DNA of 64,000 nt from Fimbriosthenelais zetlandica (taxonomy: Eukaryota). The notes under the pieces were generated by a model. It searched no databases and was not told where the DNA came from. It was given only the letters and a program-made list of their open reading frames with translations. How positions within the stretch are numbered: the stretch's first letter is position 1; each line of letters opens with the position of its first letter. Made by a program: the position numbers and the translations under genes. Below are positions 1-58,330 of this stretch, in pieces. Where the stretch lies: positions 24,800,001-24,864,000 of the forward strand of contig OZ365112.1 in assembly GCA_977030845.1 (NCBI GenBank), read 5' to 3'.

Positions 1-3000
1 ATGAACTCCTCTGAGATTGTCTGTCAAGCACATGGTCCTCACCTGACTCTATGTAGCCGCCATTCTGATGAATTATGTTATCAGATATTCCATTGGTGGC
101 CGAATAACTCGACCCTTCTTGGATAAGAGAGCCTGGCCGGCTTGACTTTCGGATCTCCTTTCCACTTGAGAGGCTGACAAGGCTCTCTCTTTTGGAGACA
201 GAGTCTCTTACTAGACTGCCTCCATTCACGTGGATATTTCCGTTCATCATTGTAGGTCGGTTACTTATGGCATCTATGGGTTCATCATAGGAATCGTCCA
301 TGTCCATGTGACTTTCAGACTGCTTAACAACGCTTCCCCTATCACTCAGATCATCGTACCTTCCTGCATTGTACACTACCGTCGAACCAGCCGTGCTTTC
401 AATATCTTCGCTGAAACCATGCTTCCCAATAGGAGCTTCTCTCTGAGCTCCGATATCCTCAAAGCCTGCTCTGACTGCCTTCAGGTTACTGGCTTGTACA
501 ATGTCTTTGTCTTCAGTATGACTTGAGATCACCTCACTTGCTGCATGCTCCGAATAATCATTGGCTCTATCCCTGATGGAACCGATACGACCAGTGCCAA
601 ACTCTTCAGTAGAATTAGTAAAACTAGTGTTCAGGTCAGATTTGGGTGGACTGGATGCCATCTTTAGGAAAGAATGATTGATGATAGACCCACCATACGT
701 TGGTATGACCTTCTCTCCTGTTTTCTTGGTTATTTGTTCAAAGATGGACAATCTCGCTTTGACATTGAAAGCCGAAATATCATACTCATCATCAAGGTGT
801 TCATTAGCTTGCTTGAGTTTCTCGCCATATTTGTCTTCATCAATGTTGTATTTGATTTCAGCAGATTCTCTTTCTTCTGTTTTCTTGGACCGTAGAACAT
901 TGTGAAGCTCATCAAAAAGTGTACCATCCTCACTGGATAGTTGTTCTTTGGGTTCCTCCCTCAACTGGGATGGTTTCAGGCCGCGTTTCTCTCGGATGTC
1001 TGCTAAAATGGCTTTGGATATAGACATATCCTCATCAGACTCATCCGCAGAATTTCCATTGGTTACAACAGTATGAGCTGCCAGGGCGCCTACAATATCA
1101 CCAGTTTCAGATTGTGGTTGTTCCTCGGCTGGAAGGTTGTTGGAATAACTCATCCTTGCTTCCTCAGGCGGTGGGGCTGATTCCAGGTGATCCACCTCAG
1201 TATGAGTGATGACATGATTTGTTTCTTCTGAGTGATATACAGAGTCTTCTCTGTTCCCTTCTGACTCTGCATATTCTCTCGTCTGCTCATACTGATTAGA
1301 ATGTTGTACATCATGATCATATACATTCTGCCCTTCTGTTTCTTCATGAGATCTTTCACCACCGTGACCATAGTCGTTCTGCTCTTCAATATGCTCAGAA
1401 TAACGATCAGAGTTTCTCACTTCATTATTATATTCATTCTTCTCTTCTACCTGTTCCTCATTTAGCGGTGAATACCTGTCAACTTCCTGTTGATATAACT
1501 CATTGTTATCTATGATTGCATGCTGTACGTCCTGGTCCATTTCTTGGAATGAGTGATTGTGTGTACTTGCTTCCTCAATGTCATTCCCTGTAATATTGTC
1601 ATGAACAGACTGGCGACTTTCCTCATGCGACTGGTTGAATCCAATATGCTCGGAATGAGTTGCTCCTTGGCTAATCTCATCCTGATGCCCCGACTCGTAT
1701 GATTCGTTCTCAATAAGGGCTCGGTGTTCCGTGCTGCTGTCCTTATCATACTGCGAAACTTCACCACCTTGAGCACTGGAGTCATGTGTTTGATATCCTT
1801 CGTCTTCTCTTGGAAGGCCATCTTCTATTTTCCTCACTTGAGAATCTCCGGTTGCCCCATCAAGACTCTCCCGTTCATCTTCATATAGAATGGGACTCGA
1901 CCTTGCTCTGGGGCCAGGGGACTCGGCCATGATTAGGGAATCAACATCACCAGAACCTTCAGGCTTTAACAACTGATTCTTGTATTCTGAAGTTTCGGAA
2001 ACAACAGCTACAGGAGCTGCGGAGTGGGCTTCTTGAACAAATTCTTCATTGACTCTCGTTTCTGATTCTTTATTCCATTCACCAGGGTGTTCATAGTCCT
2101 CATCTTCCAGCTCTTCTATTTTGGCATCATCATATCCAAGACTGGAATAAGACATCGCTCCAGCTGTGGCAATGACAGCAGCTCCAGCAGTTGCTGCACC
2201 TGCAGGTAGTAAAACATCTCTCGTCTTCGTTTCCTCATCTTCATTTCCTTTGCTATGGCCTTTGGATTTTCTGAAACCAAACCATGATCTTTTCTTTTCC
2301 TTTGTCTTCCTTTCTGCCTCTTCAACAAACATGGGTTCATCGTCTGATCTCACAACGTCATCGTCATACGTGATTTCCTTTTTGGAGCCTTTCTTCTGTT
2401 TCTTGACCTTTTTGCTCTTCTTTTCCTCAATATACTGTGGTTCTTCAATATACATTTGTTCTTCCTTTCGCTCTGAGTGAATAACAGACACATCTGAGGC
2501 TTCTACCACATGGGCTTCTTCCTTGACAAATTCTGTGTCTGTGGGTTCAATAATTGCCACTGAATCCTTTCCCTTTTTCTTCTTCTCTTTCATTTTGTAT
2601 TCTTTCTCAATCACTTTCTTCTCGTCTTTATTAACGACTAACGTCTCCTTCTTTTCTTTCTTTTTCTTCTTAGATTCCTTTACCACAGGAGCAGCTGCAG
2701 CCACCAGTGCCTCGTGTTCAACTATTTCATTATCAGTGTTATCCCTGACAACCTCTGTGTCTGTGGGATCCATAATTACCAGCGATTCCTTTTCCTTTTT
2801 CTTCTTCTCTTTCTTTTTGTATTCTTTCTCAATCACTTTCTTTTCATCCTTATTAAAGACTAACGTCTCCTTCTTTTCTTTTTTTTTCTTCTTAGATTCC
2901 TTTACCACAGGGGCGGCCGCAGCCACTAGTGCCTCCTGCTCAACTATTACGTTATCAGTGTCATCAATAACCTCTTCTTTCTTCTTCGATTTCTTTTCCT

Positions 3001-5582
3001 TCTTTTTGTATTCTTTTTCAACAACAAGCTTTTCATCTTTGTTTACAACAACTGTCTCCTTTTTCTCCTTCTTTTTCTTCTTTGAATCCTTCTCCTTATA
3101 TTCTTTTTCAACAAGTAGTATGCCTTCATGCTCAACAATTTCTTGTTTCTTTTTTGACTTCTTATCCTTTTTACTGAAGGTCTCCTGATCAAATTCCTCG
3201 GTCAGTTCCATTTCGTCATCAGACTTGTAACTCTTTTTCTTTTCCTTTTTGTCTTTTTTCTTCTTCTTACTTTCTGACAGGATTATAGCAGGGGCAGCGG
3301 ACTCTAATGTCTCGGCGTCTTCTGAAATGACTATTTGTTCAGCGGCATCAGTTTCATCCTTATCTGCACTCTTCCTTCCAAACAGAGAAGTTCTTGCCTT
3401 CTTCTTTTTCCTAATTTTATTTCCTGACATTGCAACTAAGGGGACACCGATTGCTGCCGCCTGAATCAATCCAGTATCATGATCATTCACCTCTTCATCG
3501 GGATCTGAAAATATTTCTTCTTTCACTTCCTCGAGGACGGGATTATTCTCTGACTGTTCTTCTGTCACATAGCTTTGCAACACAGTGTTGTCCATTTCCT
3601 CGAGGACAGGAATATTCTCTGAATGTTCTTCTGTCACATAGCTTTGCAACACAGTGTTGTCCATTTCCTCGAGGACGGGAATATTCTCTGACTGTTCTTC
3701 TGTCACATAGCTTTGCAACACAGTGTTGTCCATTTCCTCCAGGACAGGAATATTCTCTGAATGTTCTTCTGTCACATAACTTTGCAAGACAGTAGTATCA
3801 TCAGATATTGGTCTGTTTACAAAGGCTTCATCATCAGCAGTATATCTATCTCTACTAATGATAGTATCACTCTGATCAATCTCGTTTAACTCCTGCAATA
3901 ACCTCTGATCATCCTCCGGCATTGCCACCACATTGAAGTTGTCCTCTTCAATATTCTCCTGGTGATCACCCTGGTGGATCTCTATGATAGGATCTTCTCT
4001 GTTATCTCTATCTTCTAAAACAAAGCTTTCCCTTGCCATTGATCGTCTCTCACTGCCCCCATGACTGATTATTGAATTCCTATTGCTCTCTAAATGAGAC
4101 CCCCTGTAACTGCCTGTCTCTGAATTCGGCCTCATGATGTTTCTCCCGTCATCAACTTCCTCCTCAGGGTGAGCTGAATAGTGGCTTTCTTCTCTCTGGT
4201 TGTCGATAATTGAATCACGGTTGTATGCCATTTCTTCCACCACAAAGCTCTCCTGAGCCAGGGATCTCTGGTCACTGTCTTTCACTAGGTAACTACTTGG
4301 TCTTGCAACCTCATCTCTAAAAGAGGCGTTATCCATGTCAGAATGAGCCTTGCTATATTCTTGGTCCTGGTCCATGTTCAGACTCTCTCTGGCGGAGGAC
4401 AGATGCCTTGACTGTAGGAGACTTGAACTGTTACTGGCTACAACATGGTGAATGTCATGTTGACCATCGTCTCCTGACACTAAACTCATGGAGCGCCTCT
4501 CCATTTGCTGCTCTCCGTTAAACTCCTGCAAGCTGCTCCCTTCTTTGAAGGACTCCGCTTTTGATAATCTGCTTCTCACTGCTTCACTATGCAAAGAGTC
4601 TACATCATCCTTGAATGATGTCCTTTCAGCAAATGAGGATCTCTGGACTTCTGTATCATCTGCTCTGAACTCTGGTCTTTCTTCCACATGCACCATGTTC
4701 TCAGATATGGCGGTTTCTCCCACTTCTGACTCTCTGTCAATCAGTGAAGACTCCCTCCCTGTCTGTTCGAAGCCCTGCGTGTAAGACCTTCTCTCGTCGT
4801 TATAATCCTGTCCCTCATGTTCACTACCTTCGTCAATCATCCTGGGAGCTTGTGCCACTGCAGCAACTGTAGAACTTTGTACAAGTTCATGGTTGTAGTC
4901 AGATTCATATTGACCATCATTAAACACCTCACTGATCCTGTTTTCTTCTATGAGGCTAGGCTCGTGATCCACAACTTCATGGGCCTGGAATGCTTCATTA
5001 TCAAAAACTTCTCTGGGCATTTCATTCTCTGAGAAAGTATTTACATGAGGTTCCTCGCGAATAAGCTCATCATCGTAATGACTATGGGCATTTTCACTGT
5101 ACACTACATCCTCGTGGTCATCATTAGCCTCAGAAACAATAATGGTTGTTGCCCCAGCGGCTACAACCGCTGCAGTTGCTGCTGCTCCTGTGGCAACAAC
5201 AGCATCAGTACCAGAGAATCGCTGGCTGCTGCTATGAGAGTTATCGGAACTTATCTTTGAACCCCTTTTTTCTTTTCGCAGCAATTTCGATTTATCACTG
5301 ACACTGTTCACATTTGAGTTATCATATTCCTCTCTGATAGCTCGGCCATTAGCTGCTTGTTCATTTACCACATGCACTTCAGCTTCGTTTTTATGCTTGT
5401 CTCCGTCCTCTTCAGTAGCCACTTTTGGTAGGAATGTGTGGCCTTCGTAGTTTAGACTTTCAGTGTCCTCGTTCTGAGCTGGTGCAGTGCTTGTTCCAGA
5501 GATGGCTCTGTCCATGTACTTGGCATGACCAACTCCTCCCTCTCTGCCCTTCTGTTTGGACTTGCGGCCACAAGGTAAGCAT
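1..5582 (-). CDS. Giant coding exon (>=5.5 kb) of an uncharacterised single-pass membrane protein; encodes a long intrinsically disordered, E/D/S-rich and K-block cytoplasmic tail
   Basis: Acceptor ttccgtgatttcag|A at 5583/5582 (phase 2). My translation in the frame starting at 5581 (CLPCGRKSKQKGREGG...) found no stop through position 2 (...DRQSQRSS), i.e. 1860 codons; the frame is consistent at both ends. Missing from the ORF track because no stop lies in the window. A possible donor CAG|GTGAGG at 43/42 could end the exon just inside the window. Confidence 0.9.
2525..2962 (-). repeat. Two ~222-bp (74-aa) Lys-rich coding repeats, with degenerate partial copies up to ~3200
   Basis: Markers such as tagattcctttaccacagg (2671, 2893) and tctgtgtctgtggg (2532, 2754) are 222 bp apart. 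Unit approx. E(H/Q)EALVAAAAPVVKESKKKKKEKKETLV(V/F)NKDEKKVIEKEYK.KEKKKK..S..I..PTDTE.V. Confidence 0.9.
3527..3796 (-). repeat. Four 69-bp (23-aa) coding tandem repeats TVLQSYVTEE(H/Q)SENIPVLEEMDN
   Basis: ttcctc at 3527, 3596, 3665 and 3734 (period 69); copies are near-identical. Confidence 0.95.
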
Positions 5583-5872
5583 CTGAAATCACGGAATTAA
5601 TGCAATAAATATAACCTTACTAATTAGAAATACCATATTGACCTAATCCAACTTGTTCAGATATATTATTACCATGTTTAAAAATGATCATTTTGATAGT
5701 AATGCTAGTGATCCACTTAAAGAAAAGTCGGTCTGCGTCTTGCGTCTGGCGGGAGACGTGCGTCTGGGGAAACACAGAGCACACAACCGGACGTAACAGG
5801 ACGTAAGGCGGTTTTGCGTCTAAGTGGATCACTAGCATAAAATTCGTTCAATATGCCCCCCAGAAAACTTAC

Positions 5873-9900: not shown

Positions 9901-11564
9901 ATACTCCATGCCAACTTAATAACCTGTCTACATTTCAGTGCAGTACAACATTTAACAGTCTCAACCTGCGGGTTTCCACTGAGAAAAGTGAGTGACACAG
10001 AGTATAGTATGGGATAATGCGAGCCTGACCGGAGGCAGGGAGATCTAGGCAAGCATCGTTTACATCATACAAAGCTGGATGACTGTCAGTGACAATCCTA
10101 CCTGATAGACAATGCCCAGAAGGTGGAGGATCAGATCACAGATAACCAGAGCCAACGCTAAATATGGCTGCCACATACACTCCTTTGGGTATTAACGTCT
10201 AATGGTAATTTCCACTAAAACGGTGTACAATCTAACAAATAAGACAATCATTGAAACCCCATATCTATTACGTAATATCTGAAAACGAAGGGAAAACAGT
10301 ACCTTTCAACCAGAAATAGTACCTTTCAACCTATACTACTGAAGAATCTAAAGAGACCATAAATAATCCAATTTTAATCCAAATAAATCAAATCTGAGGG
10401 TTTCAACCTAATTGACAATGCAAATTGCTCCGAGCATTTTCACACACTGCACATACCAATCTTCAATTCAGCAATACAATAATTATATATGTTCATGGTA
10501 TACATTTCAATAAATATATCGACCAATAAGGCCAGATAAAAAGGGAAATGTGTATAAGATTCATCATAAGGTTTTGTATTGGAGGGTGTGGCATTCTAGG
10601 AAAATCCCCAGTACTCTATAATACATCCAAAAGGATGCTAGGCATTTATTCCATCGATTTGTACTCAAGAGATCGAATTTATCCCTTCCAAAACAGAAAC
10701 AACAAAACGGTATTTTCATCCGGTCATTATATTCTAATAGATGCCGAGGGAATTATCGGCTTGTGAGAATGAGTTCTGGGATTGAACCTCTGCTATACAC
10801 TGTTTCAACTTACGTTGAAAGATTGTTTGCATAAAGTGAGAGAAGGTAAATATCACGATTCTCAATTTCTTATCACAGGTATATGGCATATGGAGTGAGG
10901 GGGCAGGGGGCAGTTCCTGTATTTACCATAAAAGGATATATGGTCGCCTACACTATAAAAAAGCTTTTCGAATATCTTTAAAGATTCCATTCAATGGGAC
11001 GCTGAATTTTCATTATAGTAATTATAAATCATGTAGGGGAGGCAAACTGTCATTTAAATATTTGTTATTTTCCAGTAGGGAAATGCTGTAAAAAGAAACT
11101 GGTTTGATGTAAAAGGGTCGAGTTAGCAGGGGCCGGGTCTACATAAAGTTGCAGCAAATGTACATGCATCAATGATTCCTTTGAATTGACAGGGACTCTC
11201 CGAAAGAAAAGACACTGATTCAAGCCAGATTCCAAGTGTGACTAGATGCACGGGATACATTAAAAGCACCACCCCAGACATATCAAACACAGTTGCGATC
11301 TTTTAAATATACCACAATGAGAAATAAATGTCCAATTTTAAATTTAAATATATGCATCTGAAAACTATATAGTGACCTAAATTACTGTCTCAAAAACAAA
11401 CGCAATACCCAAATTCCTAGAATAGGTATGGTGTGTTTTTATCAAAGTATATTGTAGTCTACACATAACATAAAAATAAATAATTATCTAAGACTTGATA
11501 ATATAATTGGTAAATACAATTAACTAACCACATGGCCTGTAACCTAGAAATTAACGGCACCTAC

Positions 11565-20267: not shown

Positions 20268-20569
20268 TCAAGGTCGCGACCTCTTCTGCAACAAGAGTTG
20301 TCGTAGCGAGTTGGCTTCCTCTCTCAAAGTGGCTACTTGTGCTCGTAAGATGGCATTTTCTTTTTCTAAAAAGCTCGCCCTGATAGCGATCTCATCTTCT
20401 CTGGCTTTGCGAGCATCTCGCGACTTCTTCGCTGCTTGGTTGTTTCGTTTTCTTCGTTCGAAGTATTTGTTGTCTTTCAGGTCTTCTGGAATGGGTTTCT
20501 TTTCGCTCCGCGGACGGCGTTGCGACTGTTGTGTGAGAGCAATGGCATGAGCGACAGCGCTTGATGGAC
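20268..20569 (-). CDS. Last coding exon of a PAR-family bZIP transcription factor (CES-2 / Drosophila CG7786-like; HLF/TEF/DBP/giant-related)
   Basis: Acceptor ctttctacttcttctacttgcag|GT (phase 1). Encodes RRPRSEKKPIPEDLKDNKYFERRKRNNQAAKKSRDARKAREDEIAIRASFLEKENAILRAQVATLREEANSLRQLLLQKRSRP*: the PAR-type basic region (NNxAAKxSR, IAIRASFLEKEN) plus a leucine zipper. Stop TGA at 20270-20268. Confidence 0.95.
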
Positions 20570-47100: not shown

Positions 47101-50100
47101 CCTGACCTCTGTCCACTGTGTTAGCTGCAGAACTCTTGGACCTAATGTGACATCTGCCAAGATCAATTTTTGTGAGTTCCAGCAGCTGAGTAATTCACAG
47201 GCAACAAACATGCAAGTTGAGACAAGAAAATAAAAGGTATAAAGAAGAACTGAGAAGTGGTGTTGGTCAGGGCTGGCCAGGGGGTCAGAACTCAGATCTC
47301 CATAAGTCAGGATAATTACAAAGAACATCCGATCCAATCACGATGGAATGTGAAAAATGGCCGTACATCATCTAGACTTGGCTTCTGTCCTTTACCTCTC
47401 ATAGATCTCTCCTGGCTGAAGACAGTTTGGATTTATAATTCATTAGGACATGATTGGCCAGGAGAGCTGCTTAGAAAACCATCAAGATTATATTAGTGAC
47501 TAGCCTGACTTCTGCCCATTTATGTTCCCTCAATGGCGAGGGTTTGTTGTGTGAATAATGTGTTAGTGGGTGTGGACGCAACACACCAGGGCTTTATACT
47601 TGGTAATTGAAATTCATTTTCATAAAAGCCTGGTGCCCCTTTTAGACAGTGACTTCCTGTCCACCCAAACTCGCTGTTTTACATAAATTCAGTTACTAAG
47701 GGGGACAATTTGCATTGAATGGGGAATGGTGGTTGGGGGAGTGGGGGTTGGGGGGCTTGTGGGTTTTCCTATAGAGAAATTGCTTGCATGAAAACCCAAA
47801 GTATTAGCCCACTTTGATATCATCAACCAGGTGCTGGAACCCGTATGTATGAGAGGCAAGGACACCGAAACTGACAAAGCTAATCTAATCAATCGACAAC
47901 ATGGCCTATTACCTCGATTCTAAACAGAGCTCTAATCGAGACCAAAGCCAGAAGACAACTGCTTTAGTGAGCTCAACATGCAATCATGGGCACTGCACTA
48001 CCTCACCCCTGAACTGTTCACAAAGATGTTCTAAAAATCCCAAATTCCTATTCATACGACTCACATTACTGCGAATTTTCACTTAATAAACTGACAGGAG
48101 AAAAGAAATAAACACAGGGACATATACAATGAGAGGTAGTCTAAATATTCAGCCCTTATCTTTGTGAAACAGGAGCTGGAACCTCCGGCGGGAGGGCAGT
48201 ATAAATATTTGGAATACTGAACTGATTTTGCATATAGAACCGTTAAGTTTTCACACCTGAGTTGAGAGCACCGAGGAAGAGGAGGTGACAGAAGAGGACA
48301 TAACCTCATCCATTCTTCACTGAGACATGGATCACTTCCCTTCAGGGATCAGCAAGGACGTTCACATAGTTTAATTCAGTTAAAATCAAATGAAACATAT
48401 TCCCACCATGTTGGACTGAATGGGGGAACGCAAATTGATGGGTTCGAAAATCCATTTCTGAACCATGTTTTGGATGTATAAAAACATGTGTCGCGCACAA
48501 TTTGTATTCCACAAAATGTTTGGCAACACTAAAGTATAGATTAATTAGTACTTTACTTCTGGATACTGATCACTGAAATTTGGCTTTTCATGGAAATGAG
48601 CAAAAGTCTATCAGATATCACAAACCATGAAACAAGCTGTTACCCTATCTGGAGATAATGAGACCTCGGGTCGTGCAGTAGTGTTTCTGCATTGCATACG
48701 GACAAGTTGATGGCCAGAGCTGGACATTAAAAGTCAGGGTTATGGCTCTTTCCTCCACGGCGTGTAGCCTACCACCAGCTTGTCCATCACCATCAGGTAT
48801 CACTATACACCCGAGAGGTCATCTGGTACCGAGGGGTCAGTCCGTACAAGCCCAATCTCTACCCTACCACTAGTCATTTTTCACCCCTGCGTCAGATGGT
48901 AGGCAGTGGGGTGTTTCTGACGGCTTGACCACCCACTAGATATACAGATCCCTGGTCAGTGGGGTAACAACAGAGGGAAGGAGAGGGGTCAGGGGTAAGG
49001 GATCAGGTAACATATAAGACACCCCCTGATCACATATTGGCTGGTATATAACAATGGCGGAGTTTCACATTCTTGTGGGCGTCAAGGAATGACCAATGTA
49101 TGCCTTCACTTTCTGCTAAGGGTGGGTTTCTAACCAAGACCACAAAGACACTGGTACTTGGGTATATATGATTAGTTCTTATGCACACACGCACTATGTA
49201 AGCCATGTATGATCGGACATATTGTTATTTGATCTTTGAGTGGTCCTTACACAAAGTGACCAGCTTTGAAATCGGAGAAGTATACACAGCAAGTCCAAAC
49301 TTAATTCAGGCTGAGAATTTCTGCTTGCATCAAGACAGTCCTTCATGCAATGTACCTTCCTTTCATACTTCTGAGAAAGGCACCGAAAGAGTTTACTTCT
49401 CCAATGGCTTCAGAAGACAAACAGGAGTGAGTTGGTTGTGTAAAGGTCAAATATTACTTGTACATTCGTTATGTAACGTGAAAGATGACCAGCATTGAAC
49501 AAATAACCTTGTGACCGTGAATAATGGCCACCAAATGACCGGTTACACATACAACATGCCTCTTCATCAAATAGATCATAAATCATGGTCCGATAACCCT
49601 CTAGCCACCAGAATAGTCCAACGGCCTCCGGCTAAATGCATTGTGAAATAATTCTGTAAACGAGCAGGCCCAATGACAGGTAGAGCCTCTCTGCTCTAGG
49701 GTAGCATTAGCCTAGAGATGACATTAGTTAATTTACATACAAAACACATGGGGACGGAAGGTGTGACAGGAAGTAGTTCCTCTTGCATTGTTTTCATCAC
49801 ACCTTACCCAACGTCCAAACACTCCCATCCGCCACCTCTTTTGATCGTTTAAACACATTAGTCAGTGTTTTCAGTGGTGTTTTTTTTCAAGTGAGACTCC
49901 TTTCAAGAGATTTGTCATGCTGTTCTTGAACAAAACATTTGTGGATTGAAATGGATAGAAAACTTAAAGGTTGCAGCTTATACATTTACACAATTATTCT
50001 TACAATGTATAGATACAATTCTAAGTTTATAGGAGGTTTCATTATAGTAAGGAGAATTAAAGTCAATAGAATCTGTGTCGCATATGTTCTGTCCAAAACT

Positions 50101-53100: not shown

Positions 53101-53601
53101 TTCATCGTCATGTTGCTCAAGCCCATGCTCTGCTACAATGCATCGTAACTGCTCCCTGAACGAGGGAATTACTTCCTAATCATTCGAGGAGTGAGATTAA
53201 AATTGAATCCAATCTTATGCAACACGAGTTGAATTTAATCTTTAAGCCAATACTTGAGCGATATTAGATGCGGTAACTAGTCTGGTAAGTACATCATGGA
53301 TTCACTCAGTGACATAATTCATAGTCATTAATCTACTCCAATCAGTTGGTGGGCAAATAAAGCTACTATCACATCACTGTAATTACATTACAACAGCCAT
53401 ACAACATTCTCATGCTGAGAAATAAAAAATTCTACTTTCAATTATGAAATGGTCACTTTTCTAGTGTAGCGGACTGCAATATTCAATGATACGTGCGGAT
53501 AATACACGAGAGATTAGCATTTACATATCATGCATAATCCATCATTTAATCTTGTCTCACATGACTAGGCTTGTTCTAATTTGATGTAAAGACTGATCCA
53601 T

Positions 53602-55857
53602 TTACGTAAGGGCATATTAAGCGCCGGCGTATTATGAGGTCAAGCGCCGGCGTATACTATGTCAATAGATTCGACTCTAAACATTTCACTCTGCAATTTT
53701 CAAGTCATTGTTGCGTGGCGGATCCATCCCCTTTAATTTCTTCGGATTTCTCTAATCTAATCTAATATAATTTAAAGAACGTAGTTTAGCGTTATTTGCT
53801 TAGCCTTCGTTTACTCCGCCTATACTCCTATTATTTTTTATATTGGGGTAATTCGGAATAGTTTTTGCATGATGACACGTAAGAGATATCACCTATTATT
53901 CTGCTTTACATACAGACATGAAGATGAAGCCAATGATCCTGACTTGGTCACCATAGTTACGCTTAGCTGCCATCTAATCAGGTCCCTCAAAGGTGGAACA
54001 ACTCTTACGTAACCTGGACAGCTCTAAACTAGACCGATACTTCCTCCTCCTTTATTCTCGTCCTTTAAGACCGTAAAGTTCAGTTAAAGCTTCCTTAGAA
54101 TGCTGTAATCTTGCCATAACTAATTCCATTGCTAAATTTTAAATTTGCGATAAATTAAATACACGCATATCTGATGCAAGACAGAAACTAGCTCTTTATC
54201 TTAGTACGCCCACGTTTATTGAAATAAAAGTAGACCCAACAGAAACGTCATTGTTTTTGTTAGATATACCTGTATCCATTAAGAATTTAGATATCATTAC
54301 TTTTAAAAGCTTTGGGAGGGATATGTCATGTGTAAGGACAACTAACCCACTTAGACGACAGGAGAGAATCCACATTTAGCCGTTGGTTTTAAAAGCGACC
54401 AGTGAATGCACCTGCAGCTCAGTTCGCCTACACAGATTGACCAGTGGCCACGTAACCTGTCCGACCATGGTGAGAGTTGAGAGTGACCACCAGAGTGGAT
54501 TCATCTACACTGGACAACAGGACAATCAAGTGGACAATATGGTTAGACAGTGAGTTACGAAGACCACGTAGAGGCTTACGTAAGGTCACTAAACATTATT
54601 GCAAGACCCCCTGGCGACCTTGTCTAGGGTACAGTATGGGAAATGTCTGGCGTTACATCATGGAGCAGATAATAGATTGGTCAATGCTTTGATATATTAG
54701 GGCTTAAGGGACGAGATGAGAATCTATAAGTGACCGCTAGAATATCCACCCAGACACATAGATGACTATAAAGGGACCTCCCTAAAAGTGATTTGCAAAT
54801 TAGCAGGTGTTTTAAATGCATATTAGGTCACAAATGGTCCAATGGGGATTAGAATCTTTAGCTCCTCGTCAAATGTTCTAAAAGTATCTTCTCCTTTTCA
54901 AGTCGTATTTCAATTGAATTCAAATCCAACTTTCATTGCTACGAGACTGAATTAATCATGTTTAAAATCAAATTTAAAAGTCCTTTTGACGGATTTCAAT
55001 TTTCCTCGCATATTTGCCCATTCCATCCTTCATCGCTACCCCCCAACATGGTGAACGTGGCACGGGTCGCCCGGGTGACTACACCCCGTTACCAAGGACC
55101 TGACCCCCGGCCCCCCGACACCCCACCACCACGCCCGGGGGTCACAGCCCTCACCCCACTCCACCACCAACATCACCTTCACTCCCTCTTCACTGATTGA
55201 GATATGTAGGGGTAAAAACCTTAACATTTGACACCTTAGGCTCTCTGATATCACCCGGAAAATAATGATTGCAGCAAGTCGACAGTCAAGGAGGGGCAAG
55301 AGGCTATAGGGAGGGGTAGGGTGAAGTGGGGGCATAGGGCAGGGGGTAAAAGTGAGGAGCCAAAGGATTACATAGATATATAGCCGTAAATATGATAATT
55401 GGCGTCACGTCTAAAATCCCATCAGAAAAACCTTTACAGGCAAAACGAATACATTCCCATAACTTTGAGGAGATGTGTATTGGAGGCCTGGACGTTCAGT
55501 TGAATGATATCCAAGAGGCTAAACATACAGTCCTCAATATTTCAATTCATCCAAAGTTCATCCCAAATTTCAATCGTTTTTAATCTAAGGCTCAGCTCAT
55601 TTCATGAGATAACATGATGACGTTAAGGTTATGCATGACCATACAAAGTCTGCGTAACAGTTACATAATCCAGAGCCTGCATTAAAGGACAAATTACCTA
55701 AACTACTTTCACAAAAGGGACGCGAGTTATAATATCTCAAATTGACAAAAAAGATTCGTTTTCAGAAAGCTTAAGGAAGGCTAGTTAAAGGCTTATTAAA
55801 CCTTACTTTGCCACCAAGTTGTAAAAATCAATTCAGAGATGAACTTATTTGCGTAAT
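53602..55857. promoter_or_regulatory. Cluster of PAR-bZIP/D-box sites in the bZIP gene's intron
   Basis: TTACGTAA at 53602, 54005 and 54576; GTTACATAAT at 55660; TTGCGTAAT at 55849; GTTACATCA at 54652. The established PAR/E4BP4 consensus is RTTAYGTAAY. Confidence 0.6.
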
Positions 55858-56512
55858 GCCTTTCAGACCTTAGTAGACATTTTTGAGGGGCACAAAGAGT
55901 CGGGACTGAATTGTCAATATGATTTCACAAAAAGTGGTTCAGGACTAATGAAATCTCACAAAATTGTCCTTAAGTCCTTAAGTGAATCCATGAAGACAGT
56001 TTAGAAGGAGGGGACATAGTAAGGGGCTCCCCAAAAGACCTGCATCTAACTTCCAAGACAAATCTAATGTACATGTCCATATATATATGCGCGAAGATGC
56101 GCGACGCGACGCGCTTATACTAGCCAGTGACGCGGCATGGCGGATGGACCGCGAAATTAGAACCATTCCCATTTGTCAGGTTCACTCAGATATATGCATA
56201 TTCATGAGGAAAAATGACCACATGACTGGGAGAGTAAAGCCCCCATACAAACCCCGTTCTAAACCTGACTTTTAAATGAAAGGAATTGCTATTGAAAATT
56301 CCTAATATGACATTCAAAAGTTAATAATTCTAGAGTAAGACAGTCCTGTATTAACTAAAGTTCTATCAACCTTTACAGAATTCTATACATTGATAATAAA
56401 AAAATAAGTTATTTTCTCATGAAAACACTTTTTGTTTGCCGGGAATGGGGACTTTTGGGGAATAGAGCAATTAAGCGTCAGCTTTAATGGAATTTTGAGA
56501 ATAAATACATAC

Positions 56513-56825
56513 CCCACATGGCATACATGGACATAGCGTCTGCTTGGGGAACTCCCATCATCATGTTAATGGCTGACAATCCTCCCGGTGTCAGACCTGG
56601 AAACTGAGCTTGGTTGTTGGGTGTGATTCCTCCTATCTCACCGGGCGAGGAGGCGAGGCCGGCCATGGGCGAGCCGAGCGCCGCCGACGATGGAGTGGGT
56701 ACGGTGACGGACACACTGGAGGGCATGGTGGGGCTGAGGTCGGCGGCTACTGCTCGCATAGCGCTGGCCGCATGCGCCAAGGAGCCGGGAGTCGTTCTCG
56801 GGTGAGGGCTCGGCGATTCCATCAT
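56513..56825 (-). CDS. N-terminal coding exon of the PAR-bZIP factor (Ser/Pro/Ala/Met-rich)
   Basis: ATG at 56825, GC-rich coding-like composition, donor TGGG|GTATGT (phase 1). G+GT = Gly joins in frame to 20569, giving a 204-aa protein (...MSMYAMWG|PSSAVAHAIALTQQSQRRPRSEKK...). No better internal exon was found in between. Confidence 0.75.
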
Positions 56826-57815
56826 TGATCCAATGGTGAAGCTGTCTAGTGGACAGCGTCCACTATACCGGAGATAGAGAGAGATGCAGGAGGAAGGGTG
56901 GCTGGAGGAGGGCGCAGCAGCAGTGGATGGACAGCAGAAAGCAAAGCTTGGACACTACTGGATCACTATAGTGGTCAGTGTCAATGATGAAAATCTGAGA
57001 TGGTCACTTAATAGTGGAAGGTCAATGTATTGTTTATCCAGATATTTCCTCAATCGCAGTATATTTGCCTCCTTGTTTTACTTGTTAGTAATTTGTCTGT
57101 CCTGTCTTCTATTGCTTTCTTATTCAATATGATGAGATCCTTTGATTTTCCTTGAAATATGTGTTAATGATGAGTGAACTGTTATTTTTATCTTGGAGTT
57201 GGAATCATCAGGAATGTTTTTCCTCTGTCAGCAGTTTTTTCTTCACAAACCCGTGTGTCCTAGAAATAGGAGAATGAGGTCAATAAATTGTCTTCCATTA
57301 AGCTAATCACTATAATGGACCTTTTACATAAGATCTTTTTCGACTGAATTTGGTCCAAACTAATTGTGGACAATCTTTTTTTCCTTTGGAAATACATCGA
57401 CATACCAAAATCAATTGATCGATCTAAATTACAAAATTAATGGCATATGAGTCATTAAAGCTGTCAAATAAAATAATTCAATTCCTTCCTGAAGTAAAAC
57501 TGGGTTTAAATTGAGGTTTTACTTACTTTTTATCTCTGATTCCTAGTTATCTTTAGTGGGGGTATCTGACCAGCTCCGTCCCACACTGACTCATACTCCG
57601 CGCCCTAGAGGTCACTTGTGGTTCCTCCTCGTGTCTCCACTCACTGGAGCAAATCCCATGAAATTCCTTTGTTGAAAAATCCAGGGAAAAGTCCCACAAA
57701 TTCTTCTAAAGATTCCTTTTCCTTGACTCAGTCGCTTTCCACTTTCTTCAAAGCAATGTAAGTGCGACGGTCAGTTTGGCTGGTCAACCTCCAAGAGCTG
57801 TTTCGTTGGAACTGC
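56826..57815 (-). other. 5' leader of the bZIP gene: non-coding exon ~57815-57527, 267-nt intron, UTR part 57259-56826
   Basis: Donor AAAAA|GTAAGT at 57527/57526 and acceptor ctcattctcctatttctag| at 57260/57259. Only one ATG in the 434-nt exon-2 UTR. The TSS position is a guess from an Inr-like GCAGTT near 57813. Confidence 0.55.
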
Positions 57816-58330
57816 AGTTGATAGCGTCACTTGGCGCAACGATGGTCAATCTTGATTTTTAAAGGAAATAAATAAATTTAAGCACCAAAAGTGAATGAAG
57901 CTCCGAGGTAGTTTTTTACATCCTGTGGGATGTGTGGTGTCTGTGAGTATCAAGTCCAAGATGACCCTTACTTATGAAGGGGGAGAGAGAGCGTTATCAG
58001 AAGTGAGCAGTACCTCTGACGGTGTTATGGACACTGATGCATATTGGCTTGGTCACTCCATAACCATTGTCCATCCCATGGTCAAGCCTAGGTGATGAGG
58101 ATGCAGCAGCAGGAGGAGGTGAAGGAAGGGGCCCAATACCATGTCTTGTAGAAATGAAGCTCAGGTCTTTAAATGCCAGTGGTTAAAGCATCTATGTAAG
58201 AAAGTCTTACAAGAGTGTGTGTATATGAGAGGGTAAGAAGGTGTGGGCACTCGGTCTGACTCAAGTGATGGTCATGCACGTGTGTGTGTGATTACCACTG
58301 GATACACACGGCCTATGTAAGCCCGTCCAC

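What the first reader, a model, noticed from the sequence alone, without database searches (positions are those of the whole stretch)
53215..57331. Autoregulatory D-box cluster next to the bZIP gene's own first coding exon
Seen: three exact TTACGTAA palindromes within 1 kb (53602, 54005, 54576), ATTATGTAAC on the minus strand (55669-60), TTACATAA (57324), and hybrids TTATGCAA (53215), TTGCGTAAT (55849) and GTTACATCA (54652). More lie at 49468 (GTTATGTAAC), 47679, 59715, 60446 and 62061. A rough expectation for TTACGTAA is ~0.03 per kb. Established: PAR-bZIPs, CES-2 and Vrille/E4BP4 bind RTTAYGTAAY. Inference: a feedback loop, or input from the Pdp1/Vrille clock loop. Combined with the 36-kb intron, this would be a delayed feedback circuit able to oscillate or switch.
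Basis: partly seen in the sequence, partly recalled or inferred. Interest (0 to 1): 0.7.

Follow-up and report, generated by a model that had tools for sequence, protein, structure and literature searches.

The report
bZIP-site cluster inside a bZIP gene
Three exact binding-site palindromes for PAR/NFIL3-type bZIP factors sit within 1 kb of unique intronic DNA of a gene of that same family, far beyond chance, and the four sister genes carry the same sites, which suggests but does not prove that the family regulates itself.

Summary
TTACGTAA occurs at 53602, 54005 and 54576. The genome-wide rate is 0.0095 per kb, and about 0.18 such triplets are expected in the whole 447-Mb genome. The stretch is single-copy and not a repeat.

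Three corrections:
- None of the three sites has the R/Y flanks of the quoted 10-mer.
- The weaker and hybrid sites are at or near chance.
- The "first coding exon" (56513-56825, minus strand) is only a plausible alternative first exon. Nothing is homologous to it and no RNA runs were listed. The homology-supported first coding exon lies about 33 kb further upstream, outside the window.

The cluster belongs to a 34-kb landscape (window coordinates 53-87 kb) in the 5' half of a roughly 70-kb CES-2-like bZIP gene. The landscape holds 7 TTACGTAA and 6 TGACGTAA. The scan's neighbouring note s1-189696 ("twelve perfect bZIP sites in one intron") describes intron 1 of this same gene.

New here: the four other PAR-superfamily genes of this genome show the same enrichment, 11 TTACGTAA in 200 kb against 1.9 expected. 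The best reading is a cis-regulatory module read by PAR-superfamily bZIP dimers, giving auto- or cross-regulation within the family. Self-feedback and the intron-delay oscillator are untested. Visible parts of four orthologous loci show no such enrichment. This is a new member of a known kind, of moderate interest.

The parts
53602..53609 (.). TTACGTAA palindrome 1 (flanks T/G, neither fits R..Y)
54005..54012 (.). TTACGTAA palindrome 2 (flanks C/C, one fits)
54576..54583 (.). TTACGTAA palindrome 3 (flanks C/G, neither fits); followed directly by GGTCA
55660..55669 (-). ATTATGTAAC, a full match to RTTAYGTAAY in its T-variant form. The C-to-T change lowers NFIL3 affinity about 12-fold.
   Evidence: PMC10941009
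49468..49477 (+). GTTATGTAAC, a full match to RTTAYGTAAY (T-variant), 4 kb from the cluster
57324..57331 (-). TTACATAA (TTATGTAA on the minus strand), 0.5 kb upstream of the putative exon; alone it is at chance level
53215..53222 (+). TTATGCAA hybrid half-sites; not enriched
55849..55857 (+). TTGCGTAAT C/EBP-PAR hybrid; a single copy, no enrichment
56513..56825 (-). Putative alternative first coding exon: ATG at 56825, 104 codons plus 1 nt, GT donor at 56512, phase 1. Not confirmed.
   Evidence: ORF. The phase fits the bZIP exon. Codon-usage score is 0.49 bits per codon in frame against -0.08 and 0.09 in the other frames, and it ranks first of 85 open frames. It sits on a CpG-rich island. No homolog was found and no RNA run was listed.
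20268..20569 (-). Last exon: extended basic region, leucine zipper and stop codon. Acceptor AG at 20571-20570, phase 1.
57448..58263 (.). Four AP-1 sites (TGASTCA) in 816 bp, 0.6-1.4 kb upstream of the putative exon; possible promoter-proximal module
53619..53655 (+). Two perfect copies of a 14-nt word starting 23 bp apart, 10 nt after palindrome 1; the only two copies in the genome
10267..10276 (.). ATTACGTAAT, a perfect 10-mer D-box 10 kb downstream of the gene's 3' end

Best explanation
The three TTACGTAA palindromes are most likely a working homotypic cluster of PAR/NFIL3-type bZIP sites, that is, an intronic enhancer or silencer. They lie in unique DNA inside a roughly 70-kb CES-2-like (PAR-related) bZIP gene on the minus strand.

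They form the 3'-most block of a 34-kb landscape (window coordinates 53-87 kb) that also holds four more TTACGTAA and six TGACGTAA hybrids. Three of those four TTACGTAA have perfect RTTACGTAAY flanks.

Dimers of PAR-superfamily bZIPs would bind these sites and set the gene's transcription. Candidate binders are the gene's own product, three Giant-like paralogs, the single PAR/Pdp1-type paralog and NFIL3-type factors. Because all five family genes carry the same sites, the family would be wired by auto- and cross-regulation.

Shown: the sites exist, they are enriched and not repeats, the protein belongs to the family, its base-contacting residues are conserved, and the same enrichment occurs at the paralogs.
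Inferred: occupancy of the sites, the sign of regulation, which family member binds, and that the target is this gene.
For: 1. Three sites in 983 bp against a genome rate of 0.0095 per kb: P = 1.3e-7, with 0.18 such triplets expected genome-wide.
2. The stretch is single-copy, has no repeats, and the site flanks are unrelated.
3. Across the gene span (window coordinates 20.3-89.5 kb) there are 7 TTACGTAA against 0.66 expected (P = 6e-6), and 6 TGACGTAA within 6.4 kb against 0.14 (P = 1e-8). There are none in the 30 kb downstream of 10268 or in the 14 kb upstream that belong to neighbouring genes.
4. The four paralog loci (4 x 50 kb) hold 11 TTACGTAA against 1.9 expected (P = 5e-6) and 23 TGACGTAA against 4.5 (P = 5e-10), all with unique flanks.
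5. Of the 136 words of the form NNACGTNN, TGACGTAA (29 copies) and TTACGTAA (19) rank first and second in the 324 kb held; the median word has 4. Composition-matched WWWCGWWW palindromes give 0-10 copies against 19. The plain CRE TGACGTCA is not enriched: 14 against 20.8 expected. The enriched feature is therefore the GTAA half-site.
7. As a control, the first 10 Mb of contig C1 has no three perfect D-boxes within 25 kb outside a 54-bp satellite.
8. All seven base-contacting residues of NFIL3 (R80, N83, N84, A86, A87, S90, R91) are identical in this protein (PMC10941009).
9. Pairs of sites 15-27 bp apart recur at these loci.
Against: - There is no expression, accessibility or binding data, and no RNA run could be listed.
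- The three sites lack the flanks that typify the other sites at family loci: 0 of 3 are perfect 10-mers.
- The visible parts of orthologous loci show no enrichment overall. Counts of TTACGTAA are Paralvinella 0, Saccostrea 0, Mytilus 0 and Tubulanus 3 against 0.72 expected; in total 3 against 2.05. Those loci cover only the 3' exon plus about 10 kb on each side and come from distant species.
- Several bZIP classes share the core site, so the binder is not identified.
Confidence: 0.55

Rival explanations
1. One reading: strict self-feedback. The gene's own product binds the cluster next to its first coding exon, and the long intron supplies a transcriptional delay, so the circuit oscillates or switches.
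For: Cognate sites lie inside the gene. The base-contacting residues are conserved. A long intron does follow the putative exon.
Against: The exon is unverified. The supported first coding exon lies 33 kb upstream. At least four other family members share the specificity. The three sites have poor flanks. No clock-type E-box or RORE lies nearby. A delay of tens of minutes does not by itself make an oscillator (my own inference).
Confidence: 0.12
2. The landscape is an input from other bZIP classes, not from the PAR superfamily. C/EBP or CREB/ATF-type factors would make the gene a signal-responsive (cAMP, stress, immune) target.
For: C/EBP alpha and beta bind TTACGTAA as well as or better than their textbook site in vitro (PMC10941009). 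TGACGTAA contains a CRE half-site. Four AP-1 sites lie upstream of the putative exon.
Against: The palindromic CRE TGACGTCA is not enriched at the five loci, and neither is the C/EBP palindrome. The enrichment follows the GTAA half-site and the R..Y flanks typical of PAR/NFIL3 sites. It recurs specifically at PAR-superfamily genes.
Confidence: 0.15
3. The cluster has no function. It is a chance or compositional accident, for example CpG-containing words surviving in an unmethylated domain.
For: The flanks do not fit the extended consensus. There is no conservation in the orthologous loci seen. No functional data exist.
Against: Only 0.18 such triplets are expected in the whole genome. CpG observed/expected in the region is only 0.64, so this is not a CpG island. 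Composition-matched CpG palindromes are not enriched. The same words are enriched at four unlinked paralog loci.
Confidence: 0.1
4. The sites work, but on another target, such as a neighbouring gene like the TMEM151-like gene upstream, or an unannotated transcript.
For: Enhancers can skip genes (general knowledge). Nothing here ties the module to a promoter.
Against: The whole landscape lies inside the bZIP gene's span and stops at its ends. The same arrangement recurs at paralogs that have different neighbours. No Rfam family was found in 50-60 kb.
Confidence: 0.08

Closest known systems
Vertebrate D-box circuit: DBP/HLF/TEF activators competing with the repressor NFIL3/E4BP4 on RTTAYGTAAY
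   Same: The core motif and the protein superfamily are the same. Activators and repressors share one site (PMC6627103; PMC10941009). The genome here also encodes one PAR-type gene and several relatives without a PAR domain.
   Different: In mammals, as far as I recall (Ueda et al. 2005, not read here), the PAR and NFIL3 genes are driven by E-boxes and ROREs, and D-boxes sit in Per, Rev-erb and Ror genes. Here the sites sit in the family's own genes. The window's gene lacks a PAR domain, and the three sites lack the R/Y flanks.
Drosophila VRI/PDP1 second clock loop
   Same: A repressor and an activator bZIP of this superfamily act on one shared box within an interlocked loop (PMC10705542 abstract).
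   Different: Their known target is Clock, not their own genes. No link to the clock is shown here.
C. elegans CES-2
   Same: This is the family name that databases give the closest relatives. It is a short PAR-related bZIP without a PAR domain that, from memory (Metzstein et al. 1996), binds RTTACGTAAY and represses ces-1.
   Different: Its target is a Snail-type gene. No self-regulation through clustered sites is known to me.
c-Jun positive autoregulation
   Same: A bZIP factor activates its own gene through its own site (PMC6627103).
   Different: The family and motif differ. c-Jun uses one or two promoter sites, not a multi-kb landscape.
Homotypic clusters of transcription-factor binding sites in developmental enhancers
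   Same: Three or more identical sites lie within about 1 kb of unique non-coding DNA, far beyond chance.
   Different: That concept is statistical and names no mechanism. Here the factor family and the host gene coincide.

Membership tests
PAR bZIP family proper (DBP/HLF/TEF/Pdp1), for the gene | bZIP domain of the C/EBP-like (bZIP_2) type | tested here: met
   PF07716, E = 1.7e-16
PAR bZIP family proper (DBP/HLF/TEF/Pdp1), for the gene | Extended basic region (KD.KY[WF].RR..NN.AAK.SRD) | tested here: met
   Seen in the translation and aligned to NFIL3
PAR bZIP family proper (DBP/HLF/TEF/Pdp1), for the gene | Proline- and acid-rich (PAR) domain just N-terminal of the basic region | tested here: not met
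   The residues before the basic region are Ser/Ala/Gln-rich, and the upstream exons are Ser/Pro/Gly/Met-rich without an acidic block. A different gene (C37) carries the PAR-type basic region. There is no Pfam model for the PAR domain, so this was judged by eye.
CES-2-like / 'HLF-like' short protostome bZIPs, for the gene | Best matches are members of this group, with the same exon break before the basic region and about 200-235 aa in total | tested here: met
   81-97% identity over 92 aa to annelid and mollusc proteins with these names. Same acceptor position. Predicted isoforms of 230 and 204 aa. Exons A and B align with the oyster isoform.
D-box element (RTTAYGTAAY), for the three sites | 8-bp core TTAYGTAA | tested here: met
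D-box element (RTTAYGTAAY), for the three sites | Purine at -1 and pyrimidine at +1 | tested here: not met
   0, 1 and 0 of two flanks fit. The 10-mer pattern does not hit them.
D-box element (RTTAYGTAAY), for the three sites | Bound by PAR/NFIL3-type proteins | not testable with these tools
   Needs EMSA, DAP-seq or ChIP
Autoregulatory loop | Cognate sites within the factor's own locus, beyond chance | tested here: met
Autoregulatory loop | The factor's DNA-reading residues fit the site | tested here: met
   7 of 7 base-contacting residues are identical to NFIL3 (PMC10941009)
Autoregulatory loop | The factor occupies the sites and changes its own transcription | not testable with these tools
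   No RNA or ChIP data; no runs were listed
Conserved cis-regulatory module | Sites or site density retained at the orthologous locus in other species | tested here: inconclusive
   No enrichment in the parts seen of Paralvinella, Tubulanus, Saccostrea and Mytilus. Those parts do not cover the far 5' half, and all four species are distant.

The most novel reading that the evidence does not exclude
All five PAR-superfamily genes of this annelid carry dense landscapes of their own family's sites: one CES-2-like, three Giant-like and one Pdp1-type. Together they could form a closed, mutually regulating D-box circuit that works without E-box or RORE input. That would be a self-contained bZIP network, such as a switch or timer, not described in any animal.
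Probability: 0.2. Interest if true: 0.65.

Novelty: new member of a known kind. Interest (0 to 1): 0.4.

Why it matters
If the sites are used, the PAR/NFIL3/Giant/CES-2 group in a spiralian would be wired to itself. In flies and mammals these factors are described as outputs or side loops of the clock that act on other genes.

The finding gives a concrete set of about 50 sites at five loci. These can be tested by DAP-seq, ATAC-seq and reporters in an annelid, and used to ask whether self-wiring of this family is ancestral.

In its present state it is a statistical prediction. A transcription-factor gene holding its own sites is a common arrangement.

Tried and rejected
- **Repeat or transposon origin.** Rejected. 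The stretch is single-copy in the genome, has no tandem or dispersed repeat, and the site flanks are unrelated.
- **Structured RNA.** None found in 50-60 kb.
- **Clock co-motifs.** No RORE lies nearer than 39 kb and there is no E-box cluster.
- **RNA evidence.** Two run searches listed nothing (one search was busy).
- **Homologs of the putative exon.** None were found by word-indexed search, by pairwise comparison with an oyster isoform, or by full HMMER over 1.84 billion representatives, where the one hit was low-complexity.
- **Closest relatives' DNA.** The ENA assemblies holding 97% and 96% identical bZIP exons could not be served. Owenia, Ostrea and Dimorphilus products were not on record.
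- **Random and homeobox control loci.** The homeobox list was therefore unused.
- **Atlas search.** It gave only generic bZIP_2 clusters.
- A frame error for the bZIP exon in the codon-usage training set affects about 7% of the training codons and was left in. One search was a coordinate slip, corrected.
Full report
**Setting.** The window is G000:C13:24800001-24864000 of a 447-Mb animal genome. The best matches of its bZIP exon are annelid proteins: unnamed ENA assemblies at 96-97% identity, Owenia at 91% and Paralvinella at 87%. Mollusc proteins follow at 81-88%. I therefore treat the genome as an annelid or a close spiralian.

**The observation.**
- TTACGTAA occurs four times in the window, at 10268, 53602, 54005 and 54576. 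Dinucleotide-preserving shuffles give a mean of 0.53, and none of 100 reached four.
- Genome-wide there are 4247 copies, or 0.0095 per kb. Part of these sit in a 54-bp satellite on C1, so this rate is an upper bound for unique DNA.
- Three copies in 983 bp has Poisson P = 1.3e-7. The expected number of such triplets is 2.6e-5 per 64-kb window and 0.18 for the whole genome.
- The stretch 53400-54800 matches only itself in the genome. Repeat finders show nothing relevant, and the flanks of the three sites are unrelated. The cluster is real and is not a repeat artefact.

**Three qualifications.**
Their flanks are T/G, C/C and C/G. The 10-mer pattern hits only 10267, 49468 and 55660 in the window.
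- The T-variant TTATGTAA has a genome rate of 0.084 per kb. Five copies in 47.6-59.8 kb is a mild excess (P = 0.004).
- The hybrid words do not stand out.

**The gene: last exon.** The last exon (20268-20569, minus strand) encodes an extended basic region and leucine zipper (Pfam bZIP_2, E = 1.7e-16). Its acceptor is in phase 1.

- It runs 56513-56825 on the minus strand, with its own ATG and a GT donor in phase 1. It could therefore splice to the bZIP exon and give a 204-aa product.
- It sits on a CpG-rich, 67% G+C island. It has the best codon-usage score of the 85 open frames of at least 90 codons in the 124 kb held: 0.49 bits per codon in frame against -0.08 and 0.09 out of frame.
- It has no homolog anywhere, and no RNA run could be listed.
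- Bivalve orthologs do have an alternative first exon of similar make-up. In Saccostrea it lies inside the long isoform's intron.
- I rate it a plausible but unproven alternative first exon.

**The gene: homology-supported exons outside the window.**
- One exon lies at window coordinates 69452-69733 (C13:24869452-24869733). It aligns with oyster isoforms at pairwise E = 0.002 and tblastn E = 0.001.
- A first coding exon lies at 89353-89461. Its start resembles the oyster isoform's start, but only weakly (E = 3.8).
- All junctions are in phase 1, and the long isoform would be 230 aa, like its relatives.
- The gene therefore spans about 70 kb, with introns of about 20 and 49 kb.

**The landscape.**
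- In the 124 kb I could read, TTACGTAA also occurs at window coordinates 75380, 76297, 80412 and 86833. TGACGTAA occurs six times between 78667 and 84979, and TGACGTCA at 72486 and 87016.
- Those twelve sites are the "twelve perfect bZIP sites in one intron" of the scan's note s1-189696. That intron is intron 1 of the same gene.
- Over the gene span, 7 TTACGTAA are seen against 0.66 expected (P = 6e-6). Six TGACGTAA lie in 6.4 kb against 0.14 expected (P = 1e-8).
- Neither TTACGTAA nor TGACGTAA occurs in the neighbouring genes' DNA on either side.

**The family.** A search of the genome with the bZIP exon finds four clear relatives.
- Three have a C-terminal bZIP and a shared RPFK.YP motif. 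I take these to be Giant-like from memory; this was not tested.
- One (C37) has the PAR-type basic region. This matches the single Pdp1-type ortholog reported for Platynereis (PMC13012086).
- In 50 kb around each of the four there are in total 11 TTACGTAA against 1.9 expected (P = 5e-6) and 23 TGACGTAA against 4.5 (P = 5e-10). All have unique flanks.
- One paralog (C19) has its own triplet within 2 kb.

**Specificity of the enriched words.**
- Among the 136 words of the form NNACGTNN, TGACGTAA (29 copies) and TTACGTAA (19) are the two commonest in the five loci. The median word has 4 copies.
- The seven other A/T-flanked CpG palindromes of the same composition have 0-10 copies.
- TGACGTCA ranks third, but it is very common genome-wide (0.064 per kb, many copies in short arrays). 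It is not enriched here: 14 against 20.8 expected. The enriched element is therefore the GTAA half-site, not the CRE.
- Pairs of sites 15-27 bp apart recur.

**Control.** In the first 10 Mb of contig C1, perfect D-boxes outside the satellite never come three within 25 kb, and only once two within 1 kb.

**Can the gene's own product read these sites?** The closest solved structures are NFIL3 bZIP-DNA complexes. In the NFIL3-TTACGTAA complex the bases are read by R80, N83, N84, A86, A87, S90 and R91 (PMC10941009). In the alignment all seven are identical in this protein. The same paper reports three further points:
- TTATGTAA binds about 12-fold more weakly than TTACGTAA.
- CpG methylation weakens binding about 14-fold.
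- C/EBP alpha and beta also bind TTACGTAA well.

So the product very probably binds the core. So would its four relatives, and possibly C/EBPs.

**Conservation.** Only distant orthologous loci could be read, each covering the last exon plus about 10 kb on either side.
- Paralvinella, Saccostrea and Mytilus have no TTACGTAA.
- Tubulanus has three against 0.72 expected.
- Together they have 3 against 2.05 for TTACGTAA and 5 against 2.98 for TGACGTAA.

This does not support deep conservation. It also does not test the 5' half of the gene or close relatives.

**Reading.**
- The cluster is most likely a cis-regulatory module read by PAR-superfamily bZIP dimers. It is part of a family-wide habit of carrying the family's own sites (confidence 0.55).
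- Strict self-feedback with an intron delay is one special case. It has no evidence of its own (0.12).
- Other rivals are input from other bZIP classes (0.15), no function (0.10) and another target (0.08).
- No E-box or RORE accompanies the cluster, so a clock link is not indicated by sequence.

**Novelty.** A transcription-factor gene holding clustered sites for its own family is a known arrangement. What is new here is the particular gene, the scale (about 50 sites at five unlinked loci) and the family-wide pattern in a spiralian. I found no paper describing it, though the library is partial.

Noticed in passing
window 57448-58263: Four AP-1 sites (TGASTCA) lie within 816 bp, 0.6-1.4 kb upstream of the putative alternative first exon. 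The window total of 10 is at chance level, so only the clustering is unusual. It may mark a promoter-proximal module.
   Followed up: partly
window 53619-53655: A 14-nt word containing the palindrome CGCCGGCG occurs twice with starts 23 bp apart, right after the first TTACGTAA. These are the only two copies in the 447-Mb genome.
   Followed up: partly
G000:C13:24869452-24869733 and 24889353-24889461 (window coordinates 69452-69733 and 89353-89461, outside the window): Two upstream coding exons of the same bZIP gene, found by homology to oyster isoforms. They make the gene about 70 kb long and place the scan's neighbouring finding s1-189696 in its intron 1.
   Followed up: yes
G000:C1:622000-697100: A satellite with a 54-bp period carries GTTACGTAAC or TGACGTAA in each unit. 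It inflates the genome-wide counts of these words.
   Followed up: no
G000:C19:25774001-25824000 (L021-L025): A Giant-like paralog locus has five TTACGTAA, three of them within 2 kb and 3-5 kb upstream of the ORF. A second block 20-25 kb upstream holds six TGACGTAA and three TGACGTCA.
   Followed up: partly
G000:C11:11230001-11280000 (L011-L015): Another Giant-like paralog locus has 13 TGACGTAA in 50 kb against 1.1 expected, all with unique flanks.
   Followed up: partly
window 1-5596, minus strand: A very long open frame (about 1895 codons, running off the window start) encodes a Lys/Glu-rich repetitive protein. It is a separate gene downstream of the bZIP gene.
   Followed up: no
L001 9105-9170 (Paralvinella palmiformis): A 20-nt word ending in TTACGTCA is duplicated 42 bp apart, with CACGTG overlapping the first copy, about 8.5 kb upstream of the orthologous bZIP exon.
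   Followed up: no
genome-wide: 46% of all TTACGTAA in this genome have perfect R..Y flanks, against 25% expected from flanks at random. Part of the excess comes from the satellite and the rest is unexplained.
   Followed up: no
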